A stretch of DNA of 64,000 nucleotides from the IMG/VR virus record IMGVR_UViG_3300050821_002957, positions 310,001 through 374,000 of that record. The stretch is one strand, 5' to 3'. Shown one piece after another: positions 37,558-49,582 of this stretch (positions within the stretch are counted from its first letter, which is position 1; the number at the start of each line of letters is the position of its first letter). Below the pieces are notes generated by a model that was not told the origin of the DNA, ran no database searches, and saw nothing but the letters and a program-made list of their open reading frames with translations. Both the position numbers and the translations under genes were made by a program.

Positions 37558-38553
37558 ATGACGCTTCCGACATCGAAAACAGAATTTGCAGTCGTCTATT
37601 TCCCTTTTCAATGTAGTAACCTTCTTGCTTGTCACTCAAGCATCTTAAAGGACGCAGCACAAACTCACAACAGAATTGTCATTGCACTTCCTGTTCGCCG
37701 GATCTCACCATCAAAAGATTCTCCGTTGGATTTTGTGACTCGCCAACAGATGATCCAACAACAATTTCAGAATGCTATTATTGTCCCGGTGGTAGATACC
37801 AAATATCCCCAGAACAAAGTTAAGGCGCTTGAAACTGCGGTCGCTGCTCCATTTTCAGAAATGCGTGGGAAGTGCGATTTGTACACCGATGTCAATTTTG
37901 CAAACCTGTATCGGGCGCATGGTGGGAAATGGCAATGTGCGGATCTGGCTCAGGATGTTTTCGTACAGGAAGCGGCGAATCGAAAACGAGTTCAATTCAA
38001 TATCGGAATGGCACAGGATTTCAAATTGGCCGATGTTCAGCACGCCTACCGGATCGGCCTCATTAAAGGTCTGAACGACCAATTTCCAATCTCATGGACC
38101 ACCGTCGATATTTGCATCAAGCGAGTGATCAACGGTAAAACTTTTATTCTACTCGGTAAGAAACCAGGAGAGAATGGTTGGCGCTTTCCTGGTGGATTTA
38201 AAGATCGTGGCGACATGAGCTTCGAGATTGCTGTTATTCGTGAAGCCAGTGAAGAAATTCTTAAACCCGGCGTCAATCCAGTCAATACATTGATGTTCCC
38301 GGAATACATAGGCAGCAAGAACGTTGATGACTGGCGCTACAAAGGTGAGATCGACGGCATCAACACGCTGTTCTATCAGGTCACGTTTATTGGCGAAGAC
38401 GACGACATCAAAGCTGGGGACGATCTTGCAGAAGCCGAGTGGTTTGAGTTGACCAGAATTGATCCTCCTATTCTCGAAGGCGAACATTTGAATCTGTACA
38501 ACATGCTTCTAGTGCATGAAGGAATGACACATGAAAAATCCACTGGCAAATAA
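37558..38553 (+). CDS. NadM-Nudix-like protein (degenerate NMN adenylyltransferase fold plus ADP-ribose pyrophosphatase-type Nudix)
   Basis: FQ...H, SPLDFVTRQQMI; TVDI, WRFPGGF, REASEE, AGDDLAEAEWF. Confidence 0.8.
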   Translation: MTLPTSKTEFAVVYFPFQCSNLLACHSSILKDAAQTHNRIVIALPVRRISPSKDSPLDFVTRQQMIQQQFQNAIIVPVVDTKYPQNKVKALETAVAAPFSEMRGKCDLYTDVNFANLYRAHGGKWQCADLAQDVFVQEAANRKRVQFNIGMAQDFKLADVQHAYRIGLIKGLNDQFPISWTTVDICIKRVINGKTFILLGKKPGENGWRFPGGFKDRGDMSFEIAVIREASEEILKPGVNPVNTLMFPEYIGSKNVDDWRYKGEIDGINTLFYQVTFIGEDDDIKAGDDLAEAEWFELTRIDPPILEGEHLNLYNMLLVHEGMTHEKSTGK

Positions 38554-38923
38554 AGCCGACTGGACCCTTGTCGGTCACTTCGGAGTTGACGCTGGTCTCT
38601 GTTGGATTGGAGATCCATGTTACGTCCTTCATACTTCCGAAATGAAAGACGGAAAAGACGTACCAACACCATTACCAGAGACACTCGGAAAAGACTGGAG
38701 TGCATTCTGCAATCTACTCGATGGTTCTTATCCGACGTTGAAGAGCTTCAACTACGAGGCAGGCCATGAAGGTCTTGGGGTCTGTGTATCGACCGGCTTT
38801 GGTGACGGCACCTATCCAGTGTACGCTCTCATTCAAGAAGAGGGCACCTGGGGCAAACGAGTAGCAGCGATCTTTATTGATTTTTTTGGATTGCTGGAAG
38901 ATGGCGCTGAAGACGAAGATTGA
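38531..38923 (+). CDS. DUF4241-like protein
   Basis: GVDAG...DPCY...STGFGDGTYPVY. Confidence 0.6.
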   Translation: MKNPLANKADWTLVGHFGVDAGLCWIGDPCYVLHTSEMKDGKDVPTPLPETLGKDWSAFCNLLDGSYPTLKSFNYEAGHEGLGVCVSTGFGDGTYPVYALIQEEGTWGKRVAAIFIDFFGLLEDGAEDED

Positions 38924-38924
38924 C

Positions 38925-38954
38925 TTGACAATAGACACATCTTCCTGATAGGAT
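38925..38954 (+). promoter_or_regulatory. Sigma70-type promoter of the NAD genes with TAGACACATCTT box
   Basis: TTGACA-N18-TAGGAT, ATG 8 nt downstream. Confidence 0.7.
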
Positions 38955-38962
38955 CTAACTAA

Positions 38963-40186
38963 ATGAATCTACAAAATCCCAAATTGGTTGACAAAATCCA
39001 CAAGACACCAACGAAAGTAGTTCTTTTCGTAACAGGTGGTGGTCTGGAAATTTTCCAAACCTTGACTCATCGTGGCGGCGGCTCGGCTACGCTCCTGTCC
39101 GGGCTGATTCCGTATGACACTCAAGAGACCATCGAATTGCTTGGTGGAGTCCCAGAAAAACTGGTCAGTGAGAAAACTACACGAGAGATGGCAATGGTGG
39201 CCTTCCAGCGTGCTCTGAAGCTCTCAAAAGGCGAATACCCAGTCATAGGCGTGGCGGCGTCGGCAGTGCTTCAGAAGACGCCGTATGAGCGTGAAGGTCG
39301 AAAGCATTTTGTCTATGCTGCACTCCAGACCGACACTAAGACGGTTTCCTGTGTTCTGGACCTACATGATGGTATTGCAGAACCAAAAGACACCGGACCA
39401 ATTCCACCGGATCATGGTGTAGGATTGCGAATCATGGAAGAAATGATCACAGCCAATTTGATTCTGAATTTGATTGCCGAAGGTTGTGGACTGGAAGAAC
39501 GAATTACTCTTGGTTATGGTGTCGAAGACGATCTGACCCGGCGTGAATCGACCTTGACCGGAATTTCGATCAACAAAATCATGAGTGGTCATCCAGTTTC
39601 GTTCGACTTGGGCAAAGACACCAAAAAAATTGAAACCGCCACATTCAGTTCGACTAGTTACCGAAACATTTTCCCAGGTCGATTCAATCCGATCCATGCT
39701 GATCATTGGGAGATGTGCGCTCTCGCCTGCGAACAATTTGGTTTCGTCGAATTTGAAATCTCCATTGGCAATGTCGAAAAACCCACATTGGATTTGATTT
39801 CTCTCGAAGAGACGCTGAAGCAATTCTGCCAAGAAAGAACGCCACCATTGCCAGTTTACTTCAGAGTGTGGGTGACCAATGCTCCCACTTTTGTCCAGAA
39901 AGCCGACATGTTTCCGGGCGCAACGTTCATTGTTGGCTATGACACAGCAAAACGTATTTGCGACCCAAAGTATGCCGGAAACATCGAAGAAGTAATGGAA
40001 GTGTTCAAAAAAAATGACGTTGATTTCCTGGTGTTCGGACGTGAACTGAATGGAGTCTATAAAGCTGATGTTAGTGAATTTCCGACTTCGTTTCGACAGA
40101 TTGTTGTTACGAATACTGAGCCACGTCAGTACTCAAATATCTCTTCTTCAGAGATCCGTCGCCGCACGTCAGAAGGGCATGAATGA
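38963..40186 (+). CDS. CinA/PncC-like domain fused to a NadD-type (NMN/NaMN) adenylyltransferase domain
   Basis: N: VTGGG...GGSATLL...PY...VSEKTTREMA; C: FPGRFNPIHADH, F.VGYDTA.R, ISSSEIR. Confidence 0.78.
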   Translation: MNLQNPKLVDKIHKTPTKVVLFVTGGGLEIFQTLTHRGGGSATLLSGLIPYDTQETIELLGGVPEKLVSEKTTREMAMVAFQRALKLSKGEYPVIGVAASAVLQKTPYEREGRKHFVYAALQTDTKTVSCVLDLHDGIAEPKDTGPIPPDHGVGLRIMEEMITANLILNLIAEGCGLEERITLGYGVEDDLTRRESTLTGISINKIMSGHPVSFDLGKDTKKIETATFSSTSYRNIFPGRFNPIHADHWEMCALACEQFGFVEFEISIGNVEKPTLDLISLEETLKQFCQERTPPLPVYFRVWVTNAPTFVQKADMFPGATFIVGYDTAKRICDPKYAGNIEEVMEVFKKNDVDFLVFGRELNGVYKADVSEFPTSFRQIVVTNTEPRQYSNISSSEIRRRTSEGHE

Positions 40187-40352
40187 GCTAAAGGCTTTGA
40201 TGTACGTCTACCGAAAGGAATGGAAAGCCTGTCGGTTAAAAGTTAAGGCAACAAATCGGCAAATGGTTTTGCTGAAGCATAAGTTGAGAAAAGAAATGTT
40301 CAGACAGAAAAGAATTCAGAATAGAATGGAGAGAAGACAAAATGCCAGCTAA
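40179..40352 (+). CDS. Small basic protein
   Basis: Overlaps both neighbours. Confidence 0.5.
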   Translation: MNELKALMYVYRKEWKACRLKVKATNRQMVLLKHKLRKEMFRQKRIQNRMERRQNAS

Positions 40353-41877
40353 CACAGCATGGAGAATGCAAAACGGACTTGATGGCTTCAAGTATCCTCG
40401 TGGTTCGAGTGAGCGCATGATGCCGAAGCGCACGGACGGCTACAAACCTTCGCACTGGATGTTCGAGGAAGACGGCGTGACCGAGTGTTATGACTACCTC
40501 ACCAGCCGTGGCGGTATGTTTCAAGACCTGACGATGTTTGGAGCACAGTCCATCGTCATGAAGTACTTCTTGGGATGTGTCGTAACCCCGGAACAAGTTC
40601 GACGTGCTCGCAAATTTTATAAGAGTTATTACGGCATGGACGGCGTGTTCAACTACGAAGCGTGGATGGACATTGCGACTCGTCTCGAAGGTCGCTTGCC
40701 TCTAGAATTCTGGGCGCTGCCTGAAGGCATGAGCGGCATTCCAGTTCAGACGCCGATGATGGCCTACGTCAACACCGATCCGAAGCACGCCCATCTGTCT
40801 GGCTACGTCGAGCCGCTGACGTTCAAGGTGTGGAATACAATCACCGTGGCGTCGTTGTCACAGCACATCAAGAAAATCATCTATCAGTTCCTCGTCGAGA
40901 CCGGCACGCCCGAAGACATCATTTGGAAGCTGCATGACTTCGGTTACCGTGGTGTTTCGAGCGAAGAGTCCGCTGAATTTGCTGGGGCCGCACACCTTCT
41001 GAATTTCTGGGGCAGCGACACCATTCCGGCTATCGATCACATCAACGAATTTTACTCGGATGGTGTGTTCGACGAAGATGGTGACCCTACCTACATGCCT
41101 GCCTTCAGCGTCCGTGCCACAGAGCACAGCATCATGACGCAGAATGGCCGCAATGGTGAGTCGGCCATCGTTAAGCGTATCCTTCAAAAGTGCCCGAATG
41201 GGATCATCGCAATGGTCGGCGATAGCTACAACATCTTCGACTTCTCCAGCAAGATCATCGGAACTGAATTCCACACCGAAGTGATCGAGCGTGAAGGTAT
41301 TGTTGTGATTCGCCCGGACAGCGGTGAACCGATTCCGACGATGATGAAAGTGATGTGGGAACTCGGCGAAAAATTCGGCAAGACGGTCAATGACAAGGGC
41401 TACTACAATCTCGGCACAGGCAAGGGTCTGGGCAAGATCAAGGTGCTTCAGGGCGACAAGAACGACTACGATGCTGTCTATAACATGCTCCGTGCCTTCA
41501 AGGGCGCTCAGTGGTCGGCGGATAACATTGCAGCCTTCGGCATGGGTGGCGCACTGTTGCAGGCCAGCACTCGTGATACTCAGAAGATGGCCGTCAAGCT
41601 CTCTTCGCAGACTCGTAATGGCGTCTGGGAAGATATCTTCAAAGATCCGATCACCGATCCTGGCAAGGGTTCCAAGTATGGTCGCTTCGCTGTGACATAC
41701 GAAGAGAATGCTGGTGTACGTCGTATGGTGACCAGTCGTCTGACTCAGAATGGTTCGATTCCGAATGGCAATCTGATGCGGATGATTTCTCGCAACGGTT
41801 ACCTCGCCGTCCATGACAAATTTGAAACGGCTCGTGCTCGTGCGGATGAGTGGATGCCGAAATCCAAAGCAGCTTAA
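40342..41877 (+). CDS. nadV: Nicotinamide phosphoribosyltransferase (NAMPT/NadV family)
   Basis: TDGYKPSH, LHDFGYRGVSS, AAHLLNF.GSDT, ATEHS, VIRPDSG, LQGD, FGMGGALLQ, KDPITDPGK.SK.GR. Confidence 0.93.
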   Translation: MPANTAWRMQNGLDGFKYPRGSSERMMPKRTDGYKPSHWMFEEDGVTECYDYLTSRGGMFQDLTMFGAQSIVMKYFLGCVVTPEQVRRARKFYKSYYGMDGVFNYEAWMDIATRLEGRLPLEFWALPEGMSGIPVQTPMMAYVNTDPKHAHLSGYVEPLTFKVWNTITVASLSQHIKKIIYQFLVETGTPEDIIWKLHDFGYRGVSSEESAEFAGAAHLLNFWGSDTIPAIDHINEFYSDGVFDEDGDPTYMPAFSVRATEHSIMTQNGRNGESAIVKRILQKCPNGIIAMVGDSYNIFDFSSKIIGTEFHTEVIEREGIVVIRPDSGEPIPTMMKVMWELGEKFGKTVNDKGYYNLGTGKGLGKIKVLQGDKNDYDAVYNMLRAFKGAQWSADNIAAFGMGGALLQASTRDTQKMAVKLSSQTRNGVWEDIFKDPITDPGKGSKYGRFAVTYEENAGVRRMVTSRLTQNGSIPNGNLMRMISRNGYLAVHDKFETARARADEWMPKSKAA

Positions 41878-41886
41878 GGAAAACCA

Positions 41887-43086
41887 ATGAGCCATTTTAC
41901 TGTAATGGTTGCGGGAGAAGATGTCGATGTCCTTCTCGCACCCTACCATGAATTTGAATGTACTGGGGAAGATAATCAGTACGTCCAAGACATCGACCAG
42001 ACCGAAGAAGCTCGACAAGAATACGCCGACCACAAAGAAACGGTTGTTCGTCATCTGGCTTCTGGTAAGTTGGTCAAGAAGTTTACGAAAGAAGGCGAAT
42101 ACAAAAAGATGTTCGTCCGTGAACCTACACCAGAAGAATTGGCTCAAATTGGACGCTTTGGTGGCAGCGGCTCCTTGAGCAATGGCCTCAGTTATTATTC
42201 AAAAGATTGGGGTGATGGGTTAGGTTATCGTGCAAAGATCATCATCGTTCCCGAAGGCTACGAAGAAGTCGAAGTGCCTTGTTCTGAAGTGATGACGTTC
42301 GCCGAATTTATCGAGTATTGGTACGGGCGCAAGACGGTGCCTGAAGGCCGGGAACCAAATTTGAAGCGGCAACACAAGTACGGCTATGCGGTCGTAAATG
42401 AAGATGGTGAGGTCATTAAAGTCATTGACCGCACCAATCCCAACAAGAAGTGGGACGGCTATCAAATCGGTGGACGCTGGAACGGTTTCTTCAAGCTGAA
42501 GGAAAACAAAATTGGCATCATCGGTGAACCCGGCTTGCAGTCAATCAGCGAAAACTATAAACCACCTGCTTCAAATCGAGCCGACATCGCACGTAAAGGT
42601 GACATTGATTTCGACGGAATGAAATTTGAATCAGCGACACGAGCAGCACAGAAGTACGATCTGTTTACGTCGATCACCAAAGCTCTTCCGTTGGCGCTTA
42701 CATGGCCCTTGATGTTGGAAAAACACAAGACCGGCGTCGATGCCAAGGGTGAACCTACATACAACTACAGTGTGGCCCGAGACGAATACGGTGCCCAACC
42801 GATGGTTCAGGCGCTTCGTAATCACAAAGACGACGATGTTCGCTGGTGGGATTTGGAAGATTTCATGATGACTCGTCAAGAGTACATCGACCTCAGCGCA
42901 AAACAATCTATCATGACTTACGCCCTTGTCATCGGTGACCAGTGGATTGCTCGTGGACGCATGGGTTGGTTCGGCGTCTCCCTCGACGAGAAAGACGAAT
43001 ACAAAGTTTGGGTAGATCGCTTTCACGAAGCTCTAAACGCATTGCCCGACGATACGCTGTTGACAATTGTGGATTGTCACATATGA
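41887..43086 (+). CDS. Conserved phage hypothetical protein (paralog 1)
   Basis: MSHFTVMV...LAPY...NPNKKWDGYQIGGRW...G.MGWFG...VDCHI. Confidence 0.8.
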   Translation: MSHFTVMVAGEDVDVLLAPYHEFECTGEDNQYVQDIDQTEEARQEYADHKETVVRHLASGKLVKKFTKEGEYKKMFVREPTPEELAQIGRFGGSGSLSNGLSYYSKDWGDGLGYRAKIIIVPEGYEEVEVPCSEVMTFAEFIEYWYGRKTVPEGREPNLKRQHKYGYAVVNEDGEVIKVIDRTNPNKKWDGYQIGGRWNGFFKLKENKIGIIGEPGLQSISENYKPPASNRADIARKGDIDFDGMKFESATRAAQKYDLFTSITKALPLALTWPLMLEKHKTGVDAKGEPTYNYSVARDEYGAQPMVQALRNHKDDDVRWWDLEDFMMTRQEYIDLSAKQSIMTYALVIGDQWIARGRMGWFGVSLDEKDEYKVWVDRFHEALNALPDDTLLTIVDCHI

Positions 43087-43792: not shown

Positions 43793-44794
43793 ATGCCTAA
43801 CGGACTACAGATTTTTGGTGGGCGTGCAAACCCCAAATTGACGAATGACATCTGCATTGCGATGGAGCACAAGAACGGTCAGCGAGAGATCAAACAATTT
43901 GCAGATGGAGAAATCTGGATGCAATACACGGACAACATTCGTGGTTCTGATGTCTTCATTGTCCAGCCGACCTGTGCTCCGGTGAACGACAATTTGATGG
44001 AATTGATGCTGATGATCAATGCTGCAAAGTTGGCATCAGCGAAGCGAGTCCAGGTGGTGCTGCCATACTTCGGTTATGCCCGTCAGGATCGCAAGGATCG
44101 CCCCAGAACGCCACTGTCGGCCAAAGTGGTGGCATCCATGCTTGGTTCGCAACGCATCAAGCGTGTACTAACGATGGATTTGCATAGCGCACCAATCCAA
44201 GGATTCTTTGACATTCCTGTTGATCACTTGTATGCTCTACCAGTCTTCATCGACTACATCAAACAAAATTTTGAACTGAGTAATTTGACCATCGTCTCAC
44301 CGGATGCTGGTGGTACGACGAGAGCACGGATGTTGGCAATGAAGCTCGGCCTGCCGCTGGCGATCTTGGATAAGTTTCGTGAAGCTGCCAATGTTGCCGA
44401 AGTTATGAACATCATTGGCGATGTCAAAGGTCGAAATTGTCTCATGATTGATGACATGATCGACACGGCAGGCACGTTGGTCAAGGGTGCAAAAGCTCTA
44501 ATGAATATGGGTGGCGCTCGCAGTGTCGATGCAATAGCAACTCATGGTATCCTTTCCTACGACAAAAAAGAAGACATCTCTGCCCTCGACAAAATTGAAA
44601 ATTCGGTCATCCGAACTGTCACGGTGACGGACACAATTCCACAAGAAGAAAACCTGGGTCGCATCTTACGCAACAATCAGGGTGACGCAATTAGAACCAC
44701 GAAGAAGCTGAAGGTTCTCTCAGTTGCTCCGTTGTTCGCCAAGGCAATCCAAGCTGTCCATAATAACGATTCGGTGAGTGGCCTTTTCGTATGA
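43793..44794 (+). CDS. prs: Ribose-phosphate pyrophosphokinase (PRPP synthetase)
   Basis: FADGE, PYFGYARQDRK, MDLH, VSPDAGG, DDMIDTAGTL. Confidence 0.95.
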   Translation: MPNGLQIFGGRANPKLTNDICIAMEHKNGQREIKQFADGEIWMQYTDNIRGSDVFIVQPTCAPVNDNLMELMLMINAAKLASAKRVQVVLPYFGYARQDRKDRPRTPLSAKVVASMLGSQRIKRVLTMDLHSAPIQGFFDIPVDHLYALPVFIDYIKQNFELSNLTIVSPDAGGTTRARMLAMKLGLPLAILDKFREAANVAEVMNIIGDVKGRNCLMIDDMIDTAGTLVKGAKALMNMGGARSVDAIATHGILSYDKKEDISALDKIENSVIRTVTVTDTIPQEENLGRILRNNQGDAIRTTKKLKVLSVAPLFAKAIQAVHNNDSVSGLFV

Positions 44795-45648: not shown

Positions 45649-46719
45649 ATGTCCGTCGAAAACGACAAAACGGGTCTTCTGGATCGGGATTCATTTCGTA
45701 ATGGGGTGTTTCTGCGTGACGGGTACAAGTGTGTAATCTGTGGTGCCTCTGGCGTGCGTTTAGACGCTCACCACATCATCGAAAGACGCCTATGGGATGA
45801 TGGTGGCTATTATCTGGACAATGGCGCTACGCTCTGCGATGAGGGTCTTGCTCATCACATGCGTGCGGAGGAAACAGTTCTTACTTGTGACCAGATCCGC
45901 ACTGCCGCAAACATCAAACGAGTAATCATTCCTGACCATCTGTACAACGACTATAATTACGATAAATGGGGCAATATTCTCAACCCGGACGGCAGTCGCA
46001 CCAAAGGCGAACTGTTCAACGACGAATCGGTCCAGAAGGTTCTAAAAGCTGGCGGCGTCCTTGATCAATTTCGAGCATATGTTAAATATCCTCGGACATA
46101 TCATCTTCCTTGGTCACCCGGTCTGACTGACGATGATCGAATGTTGCCCTCGACCAAAATATTTGAAGGTCGTGAAGTTGTCGTTACTGAGAAGATGGAC
46201 GGCGAGAATACGACGCTCTATCGTGACTACATGCACGCTCGGTCTCTTGAAGAAGAGCATCATGAAAGTCGGGGATGGGTGAAAAAACTTCATGCCGAAA
46301 TCTGTTGGAACATTCCTGAGGGCTGGCGCATCTGTGGTGAAAATTTGTATGCGCTTCATTCTGTAGGATATCAAAACCTTCTTTCTTATTTCTTAGTTTT
46401 TTCAATTTGGGATCAAAATAACATCTGCCAGTCGTGGGATGATACAGTAGAGTATGCAGCAGTGCTCGGCCTGCAAATGGTTCCGGTGATCTATCGAGGA
46501 ATTTGGGATGAACGTCTGGTAAAGTCTTTTTCGGATAGCATTGATACTAAAAAGCAGGAAGGTTATACCGTTCGTGTGACTGATGCCTTTGCTTATGGTT
46601 CTTTCCGAAAATCGATTGCAAAATGGGTCCGCAAAGGTCACGTCCAGACGACGCATAATTGGAAAATGAGATCGGTAGTAAAAAATGGGCTAAGTCATGA
46701 AACCAAAGTTGCAACCTAA
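45649..46719 (+). CDS. HNH domain fused to an ATP-dependent RNA ligase domain
   Basis: RDGYKCVICG...DAHHI...NGATLC; KYPRTYHLPWS, TEKMDGEN, CGENL, EGY, AKWVR. Confidence 0.85.
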   Translation: MSVENDKTGLLDRDSFRNGVFLRDGYKCVICGASGVRLDAHHIIERRLWDDGGYYLDNGATLCDEGLAHHMRAEETVLTCDQIRTAANIKRVIIPDHLYNDYNYDKWGNILNPDGSRTKGELFNDESVQKVLKAGGVLDQFRAYVKYPRTYHLPWSPGLTDDDRMLPSTKIFEGREVVVTEKMDGENTTLYRDYMHARSLEEEHHESRGWVKKLHAEICWNIPEGWRICGENLYALHSVGYQNLLSYFLVFSIWDQNNICQSWDDTVEYAAVLGLQMVPVIYRGIWDERLVKSFSDSIDTKKQEGYTVRVTDAFAYGSFRKSIAKWVRKGHVQTTHNWKMRSVVKNGLSHETKVAT

Positions 46720-48644: not shown

Positions 48645-48794
48645 ATGAAATGGATCATGTTATTTTTGAACGGTATGATCGTTTTAGGAATTGTTTTTTC
48701 TATGTTACTCTATGGCTTCTTGATTTACGACGAACTGAAATGGGAAGCCGCTGACCAACAGTGGAAACACGCATTACAACAGGAGATTCAGTGA
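48645..48794 (+). CDS. Small membrane protein
   Basis: Hand-read 49-aa ORF; stop overlaps the nadK GTG. Confidence 0.5.
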   Translation: MKWIMLFLNGMIVLGIVFSMLLYGFLIYDELKWEAADQQWKHALQQEIQ

Positions 48795-49582
48795 AATTTT
48801 TCATCTTCTCGAACTTACTCGGCATTGCTCGTGATCCAGTCTATCAGGAGATCGTTAAATTCCTGAAAGAGATCGGTGCAGAACAGACTTTCAATTACGA
48901 AGAAGCCGTTATCAGTATTGTTCTCGGAGGCGACGGCACAGTTCTCGGAGCCGCACGAGCCGGAATTAAAAGTCCGATGCTGATTGTCAACACCGGCCAT
49001 ATGGGTTTTCTCACTTCGACCAAAGAACTTTTCAAAGAGAAAATTCAGGCGGCATACGACGGCAAGTTCACAACGACAGAACGACACATGCTCGACGTAA
49101 TGCAAGAGTCGAACATGGATGAGCCACTCAACGCTTTGAATGATGTCGTCATCAAGTCTAGCGCCCATTCCAAACTCATTCGCCTGGGCGTCTACGTCGT
49201 CAATAGCGAAGGCGTCGAGGATTTGGTGTCTGAGTACCGGGCAGATGGTCTGATCGTCGCTACGCCCACAGGATCGACGGCGTACAACATCTCAGCAGGT
49301 GGCCCGATCATTCACCCAAGTTGCCAGTCGTTCGTAGTGACACCGATTTGTCCGCAGGGATTAACGTACCGGCCCATCGTTCTGCCTTCGTATCTGAGTC
49401 TTCGTGTGAAACCGATGGAGCTTGGCTTATTCATGACCATTGACGGCCAGATCGAGCGAGCGTTGGACATGACGGCGATCTCAGTGAAGTACAATTCGGC
49501 CAAAATTGCGACAGTCGATCCCGATGGTTCTTATTTTCAGGTCTTGCGTGAAAAGATGGCTTGGGGTAAAATGCCAATATGA
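48791..49582 (+). CDS. nadK: NAD kinase
   Basis: LGGDGT, VNTGHMGFL, ALND, ADGLIVATPTGSTAYNISAGGPI; AGGAG before GTG 48791. Confidence 0.93.
   Translation: MKFFIFSNLLGIARDPVYQEIVKFLKEIGAEQTFNYEEAVISIVLGGDGTVLGAARAGIKSPMLIVNTGHMGFLTSTKELFKEKIQAAYDGKFTTTERHMLDVMQESNMDEPLNALNDVVIKSSAHSKLIRLGVYVVNSEGVEDLVSEYRADGLIVATPTGSTAYNISAGGPIIHPSCQSFVVTPICPQGLTYRPIVLPSYLSLRVKPMELGLFMTIDGQIERALDMTAISVKYNSAKIATVDPDGSYFQVLREKMAWGKMPI

What the first reader, a model, noticed from the sequence alone, without database searches (positions are those of the whole stretch)
37558..40186. Two NMNAT-fold fusion proteins with apparently complementary domain decay
In 37558..38553 the usual GRFQ..HxGH reads FPFQCSNLLACH and no SxT motif is visible, while the Nudix REASEE is intact. 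In 38963..40186 the adenylyltransferase keeps GRFNPIH.DH (Gly to Asp variant) and ISSSEIR, while its CinA-like N-domain lacks the PncC AESCTGG (VTGGG instead). Inference: a division of labour, with the dead domains perhaps kept as NMN/NAD sensors or scaffolds.
Basis: partly seen in the sequence, partly recalled or inferred. Interest (0 to 1): 0.6.

Follow-up and report, generated by a model that had tools for sequence, protein, structure and literature searches.

The report
Phage NAD pathway with dead adenylyltransferase domain
A 405-kb T4-like phage carries an NAD+-rebuilding gene cluster in which the usual two-in-one enzyme keeps its ADP-ribose-cleaving half but has lost the catalytic motifs of its NAD-making half. 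An unstudied second enzyme next door most likely does that step, and the same swap arose at least twice in phages.

Summary

**Protein 1 (37558-38553)** has the full NadM-Nudix fold. Its Nudix metal-binding residues are invariant. Its NadM domain has lost both ATP motifs and the residues that 75 canonical phage relatives keep invariant. This holds across a monophyletic clade of 41 proteins.

**Protein 2 (38963-40186)** lies directly downstream of protein 1 in every genome examined for this clade. It is a CinA-like + NadD-like fusion with T/HxxH and SxxxxR intact.

- 79 loci, 26 large viral records and 5 GenBank phage genomes with a motif-bearing NadM-Nudix have no protein-2 homologue.
- A second, independent clade next to a protein-2-type gene also lost the motifs. 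In other such loci the neighbour is Nudix only.

**What does not hold:** protein 2's N-domain is not decaying. It belongs to an old, conserved family found in 482 bacterial species genomes (those listed mostly Planctomycetota), Methanosarcina, phages and giant-virus contigs. The whole family lacks the PncC Ser/Lys dyad but keeps the phosphate-binding Ser and Tyr.

**Best reading:** a NARP2-type cluster (Nudix, Prs, Nampt, NMNAT, NAD kinase) in which the NMNAT step has moved to a different enzyme. No activity was tested. This is a new variant of a known kind, of moderate interest.

The parts
37558..38553 (+). Protein 1: NadM-Nudix (NatV-like) protein, 331 aa, with a motif-less NadM domain and an intact Nudix domain
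   Evidence: ORF. Foldseek matches 2r5w/2qjt/2qjo over the full length. Profile against PDB E 1.8e-20.
37558..38082 (+). Degenerate NadM-type adenylyltransferase domain (residues ~1-175); the fold is kept but the catalytic motifs are lost
   Evidence: No Pfam hit. R16P, H23L, G45P, D84P, W87K, S88V, G110T, S137Q and G138E against canonical invariants. The model is confident.
37600..37635 (+). FPFQCSNLLACH, in place of [GA]RFQxxxL(H/T)x[GA]H
37966..37983 (+). QEAANR, in place of SxxxxR (only the Arg is kept)
38083..38517 (+). Nudix hydrolase domain; Nudix box at 38191-38262 with R228, E229, E232 and E233 invariant in the family
   Evidence: Pfam PF00293 E 1.4e-9. Invariant columns. Foldseek matches ADP-ribose-binding Nudix domains.
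38531..38923 (+). Small DUF4241-like gene between the two proteins, conserved in relatives
   Evidence: Pfam PF14025 and phrog_5209. Homologues in L001/L082 and L240.
38963..40186 (+). Protein 2: CinA-like N-domain + NadD-like adenylyltransferase, 407 aa; the likely NMNAT of the cluster
38963..39487 (+). CinA/PncC-fold domain without the Ser/Lys dyad. It keeps S41 and Y51 (phosphate-binding positions in PncC) and has family-specific invariants R74, G112, H115, Q122, T127, R156 and E159.
   Evidence: hhalign probability 96.5%. Foldseek matches CinA structures. Invariants. PncC residue roles from PMC5384747.
39659..40186 (+). HIGH-superfamily nucleotidyltransferase domain with GRFNPIHADH (39677-39706) and ISSSEIR (40139-40159)
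   Evidence: PF01467 and TIGR00482. Top Foldseek hits are NadD structures. H248, S394, S395 and R399 are invariant.
40342..41877 (+). Nicotinamide phosphoribosyltransferase (Nampt/NadV)
   Evidence: PRK09198 413.9 bits, above its cut-off. PF04095 + PF18127. phrog_448.
41887..43086 (+). Conserved phage protein of unknown function (phrog_10079) inside the cluster
   Evidence: Atlas structure resembles DUF4241 proteins, TM 0.66.
43793..44794 (+). Ribose-phosphate diphosphokinase (Prs, PRPP synthetase)
   Evidence: PRK01259 408.9 bits, above its cut-off of 297.
48761..49582 (+). NAD kinase, syntenic in related phages
   Evidence: PF20143/PF01513. NCBIfam NAD kinase models about 165 bits. Same position in L240 and L277.

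Best explanation
The two genes belong to a NARP2-type NAD+ salvage/reconstitution cluster of a T4-like jumbo phage.

Inferred pathway:
1. Protein 1's Nudix domain cleaves ADP-ribose to AMP and ribose-5-phosphate.
2. Prs converts ribose-5-phosphate to PRPP.
3. Nampt joins PRPP and nicotinamide to give NMN.
4. Protein 2's adenylyltransferase domain joins NMN and ATP to give NAD+.
5. NAD kinase can then make NADP+.

In this phage lineage a different adenylyltransferase (protein 2) has taken over the NMNAT step. It comes from a family that always carries a CinA-like N-domain. The ancestral NadM domain of protein 1 lost its ATP motifs and further residues that canonical relatives keep invariant, and survives as a non-catalytic module. 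It is still under constraint, most likely because the Nudix half needs it structurally. Protein 2's CinA-like domain cannot be a PncC-type NMN deamidase. The most likely role is a mononucleotide (NMN) binding module serving the fused adenylyltransferase.

Shown here: folds, motif states, synteny and phylogenetic distribution. Inferred: every enzymatic activity and the roles of both non-canonical domains.
For: Cluster content:
- Nampt, Prs, Nudix, PF01467 and NAD kinase.
- The same gene order occurs in related 146-400 kb contigs.

Protein 1:
- NadM-Nudix fold.
- T/HxxH and SxxxxR are lost, together with R16, G45, D84, W87, S88, G110 and R112. All of these are at least 89% conserved in 75 canonical relatives.
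- Nudix residues R228, E229, E232 and E233 are invariant.
- The N-domain evolves faster than the Nudix domain in this clade (mean identity 0.37 vs 0.56). In canonical relatives the two are equal (0.46 vs 0.45). New clade-specific invariants exist (P16, E138, K82, Y83).

Protein 2:
- Motifs intact and invariant across a family of 295 or more proteins.
- The NadD fold is the top structural match.
- 38 of 74 viral loci with a protein-2-type gene have Nampt within 10 kb, at a median gap of 1.3 kb.
- The only other PF01467 gene in the phage is CoaD.

Complementarity:
- 0 of 79 canonical loci have protein 2 within 10 kb.
- 0 of 26 large viral records have it anywhere; 8 of these are at least 90% complete.
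- 0 of 5 GenBank phage genomes have it.
- All six examined genomes or contigs of the degenerate clade have it directly downstream.
- The tree shows two independent losses (SH-aLRT 100 and 99).
- Other protein-2 loci have Nudix-only neighbours.

Precedent: E. coli PncC S29A and K61Q are inactive but still bind NMN at micromolar affinity (PMC8231969).
Against: - No enzymatic or binding data exist for either protein or for any member of protein 2's family.
- Protein 2's C-domain is only weakly similar in sequence to any solved adenylyltransferase (best E 3e-4; PPAT, NadD and human NMNAT score alike). Its substrate is therefore inferred from context.
- Planctomycete genomes with the family also have a canonical NadD, so the cellular role of the family is unknown.
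- The degenerate domain's new invariant residues would also fit a new ligand or activity rather than a pure scaffold.
- Only two independent loss events are resolved.
- Most canonical loci were checked only within +-10 kb.
Confidence: 0.65

Rival explanations
1. Protein 1's N-domain is not a passive remnant. It has gained a new ligand-binding or catalytic function that regulates or feeds the Nudix domain, for example by binding a phosphorylated sugar or nucleotide such as ADP-ribose, ribose-5-phosphate or PRPP.
For: - Clade-specific residues are fixed in 41 diverged sequences: P16 and E138 at 100%, K82 97%, Y83 93%, R48 90%. R62 and R142 are retained.
- The domain has been kept over long divergence, whereas other lineages simply deleted it.
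Against: - The domain evolves faster than the Nudix half.
- No known motif was recognised.
- No partner was detected with protein 2, but that job gave no verdict.
Confidence: 0.25
2. Protein 2 is not the NMNAT of the pathway. It adenylylates another substrate (NaMN, or something bound by the CinA-like domain), and the phage relies on the host's NMNAT/NadD for the last step.
For: - Sequence similarity to NadD/NMNAT is weak, and PPAT scores equally.
- Cellular members coexist with a canonical NadD.
- The family is uncharacterised. No source name goes beyond automatic 'NadD/PncC' labels.
Against: - Tight and recurrent linkage to Nampt in phages and giant-virus contigs.
- The NadM domain is lost or deleted only where protein 2 is present.
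- The phage has its own CoaD.
Confidence: 0.12
3. Protein 1 still works as an NMNAT through non-canonical residues. The cluster then has two NMNATs.
For: - The Rossmann-like fold, F17, Q18, the second His (H26, 82% in the clade) and R142 are kept.
- Some canonical relatives tolerate Thr/Ser at the first His or Gln at the second.
Against: - Arg of GRFQ is Pro in 100% of the clade, and the first His is lost.
- S137/G138 and W87/S88/D84/G110/R112 are all replaced.
- No Pfam or NCBIfam adenylyltransferase model scores on the N-domain.
Confidence: 0.06
4. Protein 2's N-domain is an active NMN deamidase, making protein 2 a bifunctional PncC/NaMNAT as some automatic annotations state.
For: - CinA/PncC fold.
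- JGI names such as 'NadD / NMN deamidase PncC' on homologues.
Against: - The nucleophile position (Ec S29) is hydrophobic (F22).
- The general base (Ec K61) aligns to a variable position (T56).
- The GxAGPxGG loop is replaced. All three hold family-wide.
- S31A and K63A abolish activity in AtCinA (PMC5384747).
- Deamidating NMN would work against a Nampt-to-NMNAT route, and no NAD synthetase was noted in the cluster.
Confidence: 0.03

Closest known systems
NARP2 (Nampt + bifunctional Nmnat/Nudix) of Vibrio phage KVP40 (NadV/NatV); Osterman et al., bioRxiv 10.1101/2024.02.11.579819
   Same: - Phage-encoded Nampt next to a NadM-Nudix-type protein.
- T4-like genomic background (RegA, clamp loader, RNA ligase).
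- Same expected overall chemistry: nicotinamide + PRPP -> NMN -> NAD+.
   Different: - The NadM half of the bifunctional protein lacks T/HxxH, SxxxxR and other residues that canonical relatives conserve.
- A separate CinA-like + NadD-like protein sits between it and Nampt.
- Prs and NAD kinase are also encoded.
- Protein 1 did not hit KVP40 by tblastn at E <= 1e-3.
Bacterial NadM-Nudix (Francisella tularensis 2QJT/2R5W; Synechocystis slr0787 2QJO)
   Same: The two-domain architecture and fold match over the full length. The Nudix REx2EE residues are conserved.
   Different: GRFQPFHxGH is replaced by FPFQCSNLLACH. The SxxxxR serine is lost. The Nudix box carries a one-residue insertion, as in other phage relatives.
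PncC / CinA C-terminal domain (NMN deamidase; E. coli YgaD, A. tumefaciens 2A9S, T. thermophilus 4CT8/4UUX)
   Same: Same fold for protein 2's N-domain. The TGG turn, Ser (Ec S46) and Tyr (Ec Y56) positions are conserved.
   Different: - No Ser/Lys dyad.
- The oxyanion-loop motif is replaced.
- The domain has its own invariants (R74, H115, Q122, T127, R156, E159).
- Most of the relatives found are fused to an adenylyltransferase; ~185-aa stand-alone look-alikes also appear in the Atlas.
NadD / NMNAT nucleotidyltransferases (PF01467; TIGR00482)
   Same: Protein 2's C-domain has the fold plus the T/HxxH and SxxxxR motifs.
   Different: Scores are far below the NadD equivalog cut-off (28 vs 112 bits). 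It is a distinct subfamily with no characterised member found.

Membership tests
NMNAT / HIGH-superfamily adenylyltransferase (protein 1, N-domain) | T/HxxH ATP-binding motif after strand 1 (definition as in PMC13191266) | tested here: not met
   The sequence is L23-A-C-H26, so the first position is Leu. The whole clade lacks His/Thr there.
NMNAT / HIGH-superfamily adenylyltransferase (protein 1, N-domain) | SxxxxR ATP-binding motif | tested here: not met
   The sequence is Q137-E-A-A-N-R142. Ser is lost clade-wide and Arg is kept.
NMNAT / HIGH-superfamily adenylyltransferase (protein 1, N-domain) | Rossmann-like nucleotidyltransferase fold | tested here: met
   The model has pLDDT 92.8. Foldseek matches 2r5w/2qjt/2qjo over both domains.
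Nudix hydrolase (protein 1, C-domain) | Nudix box with REx2EE metal-binding residues | tested here: met
   R228, E229, E232 and E233 are invariant in 30 aligned relatives. PF00293 scores 38.5 bits, above its cut-off of 21.1.
Nudix hydrolase (protein 1, C-domain) | ADP-ribose pyrophosphatase activity | not testable with these tools
   Only fold similarity to ADP-ribose-bound Nudix domains (3gz8, 2qjo) is available.
NMNAT / NadD (protein 2, C-domain) | T/HxxH and SxxxxR motifs | tested here: met
   H245-A-D-H248 and S394-S-S-E-I-R399. H248, S394, S395 and R399 are invariant in the family.
NMNAT / NadD (protein 2, C-domain) | Score above the curated family cut-off (TIGR00482 NadD equivalog) | tested here: not met
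   28.1 bits against a cut-off of 112.45. It passes only the superfamily-level PF01467 cut-off, with 26.3 against 21.
NMNAT / NadD (protein 2, C-domain) | NMN (or NaMN) + ATP -> dinucleotide activity | not testable with these tools
   Inferred from linkage to Nampt and from the loss of NadM wherever protein 2 is present.
PncC NMN deamidase (protein 2, N-domain) | CinA/PncC fold | tested here: met
   Foldseek hits 6mr3, 5kol, 4ct8 and 5kvk at E about 2e-4. hhalign probability 96.5%. The Pfam CinA score is only 14.9 bits, below its cut-off.
PncC NMN deamidase (protein 2, N-domain) | Ser/Lys catalytic dyad (At S31/K63 = Ec S29/K61; PMC5384747) | tested here: not met
   Lys aligns to the variable T56. 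The Ser position is F22, hydrophobic across the family.
PncC NMN deamidase (protein 2, N-domain) | Phosphate-binding Ser and Tyr (At S48, Y58) | tested here: met
   S41 is nearly invariant and Y51 is invariant, and both are aligned to Ec S46 and Y56.
NARP2 (phage NAD+ reconstitution pathway 2) | Phage-encoded Nampt of the PRPP-using clade together with an Nmnat | tested here: met
   Nampt scores 413.9 bits on PRK09198, and protein 2 is an Nmnat candidate. Whether this Nampt falls in the KVP40 clade rather than the Namat clade was not tested by phylogeny. Prs scores as a true Prs (409 bits), not as a divergent Adps-like protein.
NARP2 (phage NAD+ reconstitution pathway 2) | Counteracts NAD+-depleting defence systems | not testable with these tools
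   Needs infection assays.

The most novel reading that the evidence does not exclude
Protein 2 represents a third, undescribed class of viral NMNAT, beside NadM and NadR. Its obligatory CinA-like domain would be a non-catalytic NMN-capturing or allosteric module, or a new enzyme. This class would have repeatedly displaced NadM in phage NAD+ reconstitution clusters, and also occurs in giant-virus contigs. Displacement leaves behind pseudo-adenylyltransferase domains that persist as regulators or scaffolds of the ADP-ribose-cleaving Nudix domain.
Probability: 0.3. Interest if true: 0.65.

Novelty: new variant of a known kind. Interest (0 to 1): 0.5.

Why it matters
Phage NAD+ reconstitution is a recently recognised way of escaping NAD+-depleting bacterial immunity. 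Surveys of it count 'Nmnat' genes by homology, and this case bears on that in three ways.
- A NadM-Nudix homologue can be catalytically dead in its NMNAT half, so counting by homology alone can misassign the step.
- An uncharacterised CinA-like + adenylyltransferase family probably performs the step in many large phages. It also occurs next to Nampt on contigs labelled as giant-virus MAGs. That family is widespread in Planctomycetota and Methanosarcina and has no known function.
- The pair gives a natural experiment on what happens to a redundant domain: it is retained as a pseudoenzyme in one lineage, partly degraded in another and deleted in others.

Tried and rejected
- **Complex prediction of protein 1 with protein 2:** no verdict (score 0.01). 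This is not evidence either way.
- **megablast of the 8-kb region against GenBank phages:** no match.
- **Neighbourhood of the planctomycete homologues of protein 2:** Ser/Thr kinase, FHA, protease and membrane proteins. No NAD-related hint.
- **First genome-contig scan with the wide alignment:** failed for lack of a conserved stretch. It was repeated with a narrower alignment.
- **Word search with protein 2's C-domain alone:** only 9 short unnamed relatives. No link to a characterised stand-alone enzyme.
- **Possible kinship to yeast Pof1 or plant 'cytidylyltransferase family' proteins:** this is a recollection plus one weak Atlas row and was not tested.
- **Literature searches:** no paper on this fusion family or on dead NadM domains in phages.
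- **The large representative search:** not used, because the family scans and word searches had settled identity.
- **Other tools:** no reads tools were used, and no other genetic code was needed.
- **NARP1 (Adps/Namat) reading:** considered and set aside, because Prs and Nampt score above the cut-offs of the true Prs and Nampt models.
Full report
**Setting**

The window is bases 310001-374000 of a single 405,631-bp viral contig, estimated complete. T4-type genes surround the finding: clamp-loader subunit, RegA translational repressor and RNA ligase. The locus reads, all on the + strand:
- protein 1 (37558-38553)
- a small DUF4241-like gene (38531-38923)
- protein 2 (38963-40186)
- Nampt (40342-41877; PRK09198, 413.9 bits)
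- a conserved phage protein of unknown function (41887-43086)
- Prs (43793-44794; PRK01259, 408.9 bits)
- further down, an NAD kinase (48761-49582)

This is the gene content of the phage NAD+ salvage route known from Vibrio phage KVP40. That route was named NARP2 by Osterman et al. (bioRxiv 10.1101/2024.02.11.579819). Here Prs and NAD kinase are added.

**The observation**

Protein 1 has a Pfam Nudix domain, but no adenylyltransferase model scores on its N-half. Its AlphaFold model (pLDDT 92.8) still matches the bifunctional NadM-Nudix structures of Francisella and Synechocystis over both domains (Foldseek E 6e-17 and 1e-13). A profile of its family aligns to them end to end (E 1.8e-20).

Protein 2 (model pLDDT 89.7) matches NadD structures with its C-half and CinA/PncC structures with its N-half.

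**Protein 1's adenylyltransferase domain has lost its catalytic signatures, and so has its whole clade**

The word search found 54 relatives. An IMG/VR scan added 80 loci.

In an alignment of 41 clade members and 75 other phage NadM-Nudix proteins, the canonical group keeps [GA]RFQ...(H/T)x[GA]H and S-G-T/S-E-x-R. It also keeps R16, G45, N55, D84, W87, S88, D92, G110 and R112 at 89-100%.

The clade has:
- Pro at position 16 in 100% of members
- no His or Thr at position 23
- Glu at 138 in 100%
- all the other listed positions replaced

[quoted passage not shown] Protein 1 fails both. Its Nudix residues R228, E229, E232 and E233 are invariant.

Within the clade the N-domain is less conserved than the Nudix domain (mean pairwise identity 0.37 vs 0.56). 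In canonical relatives the two are equal (0.46 vs 0.45). The clade has also fixed new residues (P16, K82, Y83, E138). The domain is therefore changed but not drifting freely.

**Protein 2 keeps the signatures and belongs to a large family**

The word search gave 295 full-length relatives with the same two-domain build. They come from metagenomic and viral contigs, Methanosarcina and Pirellulales. A scan of one genome per species found 482 matches, and the 80 listed are mostly Planctomycetota.

Conservation across 26 diverse members:
- invariant: G239, P243, H248, S394, S395, R399
- nearly invariant: H245

The third motif position is G, A, N or D. This phage's Asp therefore sits at a variable site and is not a mark of decay.

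The C-domain is only weakly similar in sequence to solved enzymes (best E 3e-4; PPAT, NadD and human NMNAT score alike). It is far below the NadD equivalog cut-off. It is thus a separate subfamily whose substrate is inferred, not shown.

The only other PF01467 gene in the phage is a clear CoaD (TIGR01510, 150 bits).

**Protein 2's N-domain is a conserved CinA-like domain without the PncC dyad**

A profile-profile comparison with a PncC alignment built here gives 96.5% probability (single-sequence version). PncC catalysis needs a Ser/Lys dyad (At S31/K63). Tyr58, Ser48 and Arg145 bind the NMN phosphate (PMC5384747).

In protein 2's family:
- the Tyr (Y51) is invariant
- the Ser (S41) is nearly invariant
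- the Lys aligns to a variable position (T56)
- the nucleophile position is hydrophobic (F22)
- the GxAGPxGG loop is replaced by a family-specific stretch with invariant G112 and H115

This holds family-wide, so it is an old trait and not decay in this phage.

E. coli PncC S29A and K61Q mutants are inactive yet bind NMN at micromolar affinity (PMC8231969). This makes an NMN-binding role plausible. The family's own invariants (R74, H115, Q122, T127, R156, E159) leave room for a new activity.

The cellular role is unknown. Five planctomycete genomes with the family also have a canonical NadD, and their gene neighbourhoods were uninformative.

**The two states go together**

Canonical NadM-Nudix, no protein 2:
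- Of 80 IMG/VR loci with a protein-1 relative, 79 keep the Arg of [GA]RFQ. Most also keep (H/T/S)xxH, about 16 read HxGQ, and in five the motif scan found nothing. Most have Nampt just downstream. None has a protein-2 homologue within 10 kb.
- A search of 26 of the larger records in full found only 15-21-bit hits to the short motif region. Eight of these records are at least 90% complete.
- Five GenBank phage genomes have a motif-bearing homologue (HxxH, TxGH or HxGQ), among them Tunturiibacter phage Tunturi_5. None has a protein-2 match.

Degenerate NadM-Nudix, protein 2 present:
- The one IMG/VR member of the degenerate clade found with protein 1 has protein 2 downstream.
- So do the window, L083/L084, and three metagenomic contigs of 400, 375 and 146 kb with the same gene order.

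A maximum-likelihood tree puts the degenerate clade on one branch (SH-aLRT 100). A second motif-less group (L090, L095, L130; support 99) sits deep inside the canonical proteins. That second group also lies next to a protein-2-type gene. It has lost T/HxxH and SxxxxR but keeps D80, D84, W87, S88 and D92.

In further protein-2 loci the neighbour is a 144-189-aa Nudix protein that starts at the inter-domain linker (L096, L099, L136; L150 starts there too but is 281 aa). The NadM domain is gone there.

Twenty-four of the 38 viral loci with protein 2 and Nampt have no protein-1-like gene at all.

**Reading**

The simplest account is displacement of the NMNAT step by a non-orthologous enzyme. After displacement the old domain is either deleted or kept in a non-catalytic form.

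'Complementary decay' is not supported, because protein 2's N-domain is not decaying and protein 1 has nothing to complement it.

For protein 1's domain a scaffold role for the Nudix half seems most likely. A new ligand site is the main alternative. An NMN/NAD sensor is unlikely in this clade, because residues the canonical group conserves beyond the ATP motifs are replaced too. That these residues contact NMN is my recollection of the archaeal NMNAT structures and was not checked here.

**Limits**
- Nothing here measures activity.
- Residue mappings come from sequence and profile alignments, not from superposed coordinates.
- Only two independent loss events are resolved.
- Most canonical loci were examined within +-10 kb.
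- The complex prediction gave no verdict.
- Reviews of viral NAD+ systems list only NadM and NadR as phage NMNATs (PMC9503650). I found no paper on this fusion family. The library does not hold all journals, however.

Noticed in passing
window 41887-43086 and 38531-38923: Two DUF4241-related genes sit inside the NAD cluster. One is a 130-aa piece between proteins 1 and 2 (Pfam DUF4241, phrog_5209). The other is a 399-aa phrog_10079 protein between Nampt and Prs, whose Atlas model resembles DUF4241 proteins (TM 0.66). Homologues of the larger one also lie next to Prs in other phage NAD clusters (L027, L030, L034). Function unknown.
   Followed up: partly
window 48761-49582: An NAD kinase gene lies downstream of the cluster. 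It is syntenic in related 375-400 kb contigs (L240, L277), which suggests the phage also makes NADP+.
   Followed up: partly
L011, L012-L015, L024-L031, L034, L040; L275 (LR756504): Many otherwise canonical phage NadM-Nudix proteins read HxGQ or HxxQ, with the second His of the motif replaced by Gln. No protein-2 gene is nearby. Whether these are active NMNATs is open.
   Followed up: no
L093, L119 (also L109, L118, L124; IMG/VR contigs labelled GVMAG): Contigs labelled as giant-virus MAGs carry a protein-2-type gene, in two cases next to Nampt. A 2022 survey (PMC9503650) reported no NAD+ salvage in eukaryotic viruses.
   Followed up: no
L090, L095, L130: A second, independent group of motif-less NadM-Nudix proteins lost T/HxxH and SxxxxR. 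It keeps other residues the canonical group conserves (D80, D84, W87, S88, D92). This is a candidate non-catalytic NMN-binding domain, an intermediate stage compared with the window's clade.
   Followed up: partly
G000:C1:156805-157323 (outside the window; L241:1306-1824): The phage encodes its own phosphopantetheine adenylyltransferase (CoaD, TIGR01510, 150 bits). An ORF resembling IMP dehydrogenase/GMP reductase by eye lies just upstream (not scanned).
   Followed up: partly
window 45649-46719: An RNA ligase domain protein has a weak N-terminal HNH endonuclease match (18 bits, below cut-off).
   Followed up: no
L278:9402-10703; P0007: Some protein-2 relatives have Thr or Ser instead of the first His (GSFRPATPAH, GSFNPPSPAH). 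The Thr form is an accepted T/HxxH variant.
   Followed up: no
P0133, P0136 (C-terminal tails in alignment A1): Several members of protein 1's clade carry a Cys-rich C-terminal extension (CNVCNTLLTCDCG...CWTCN...C..CC) that the window's protein lacks. It is possibly a zinc-binding tail.
   Followed up: no
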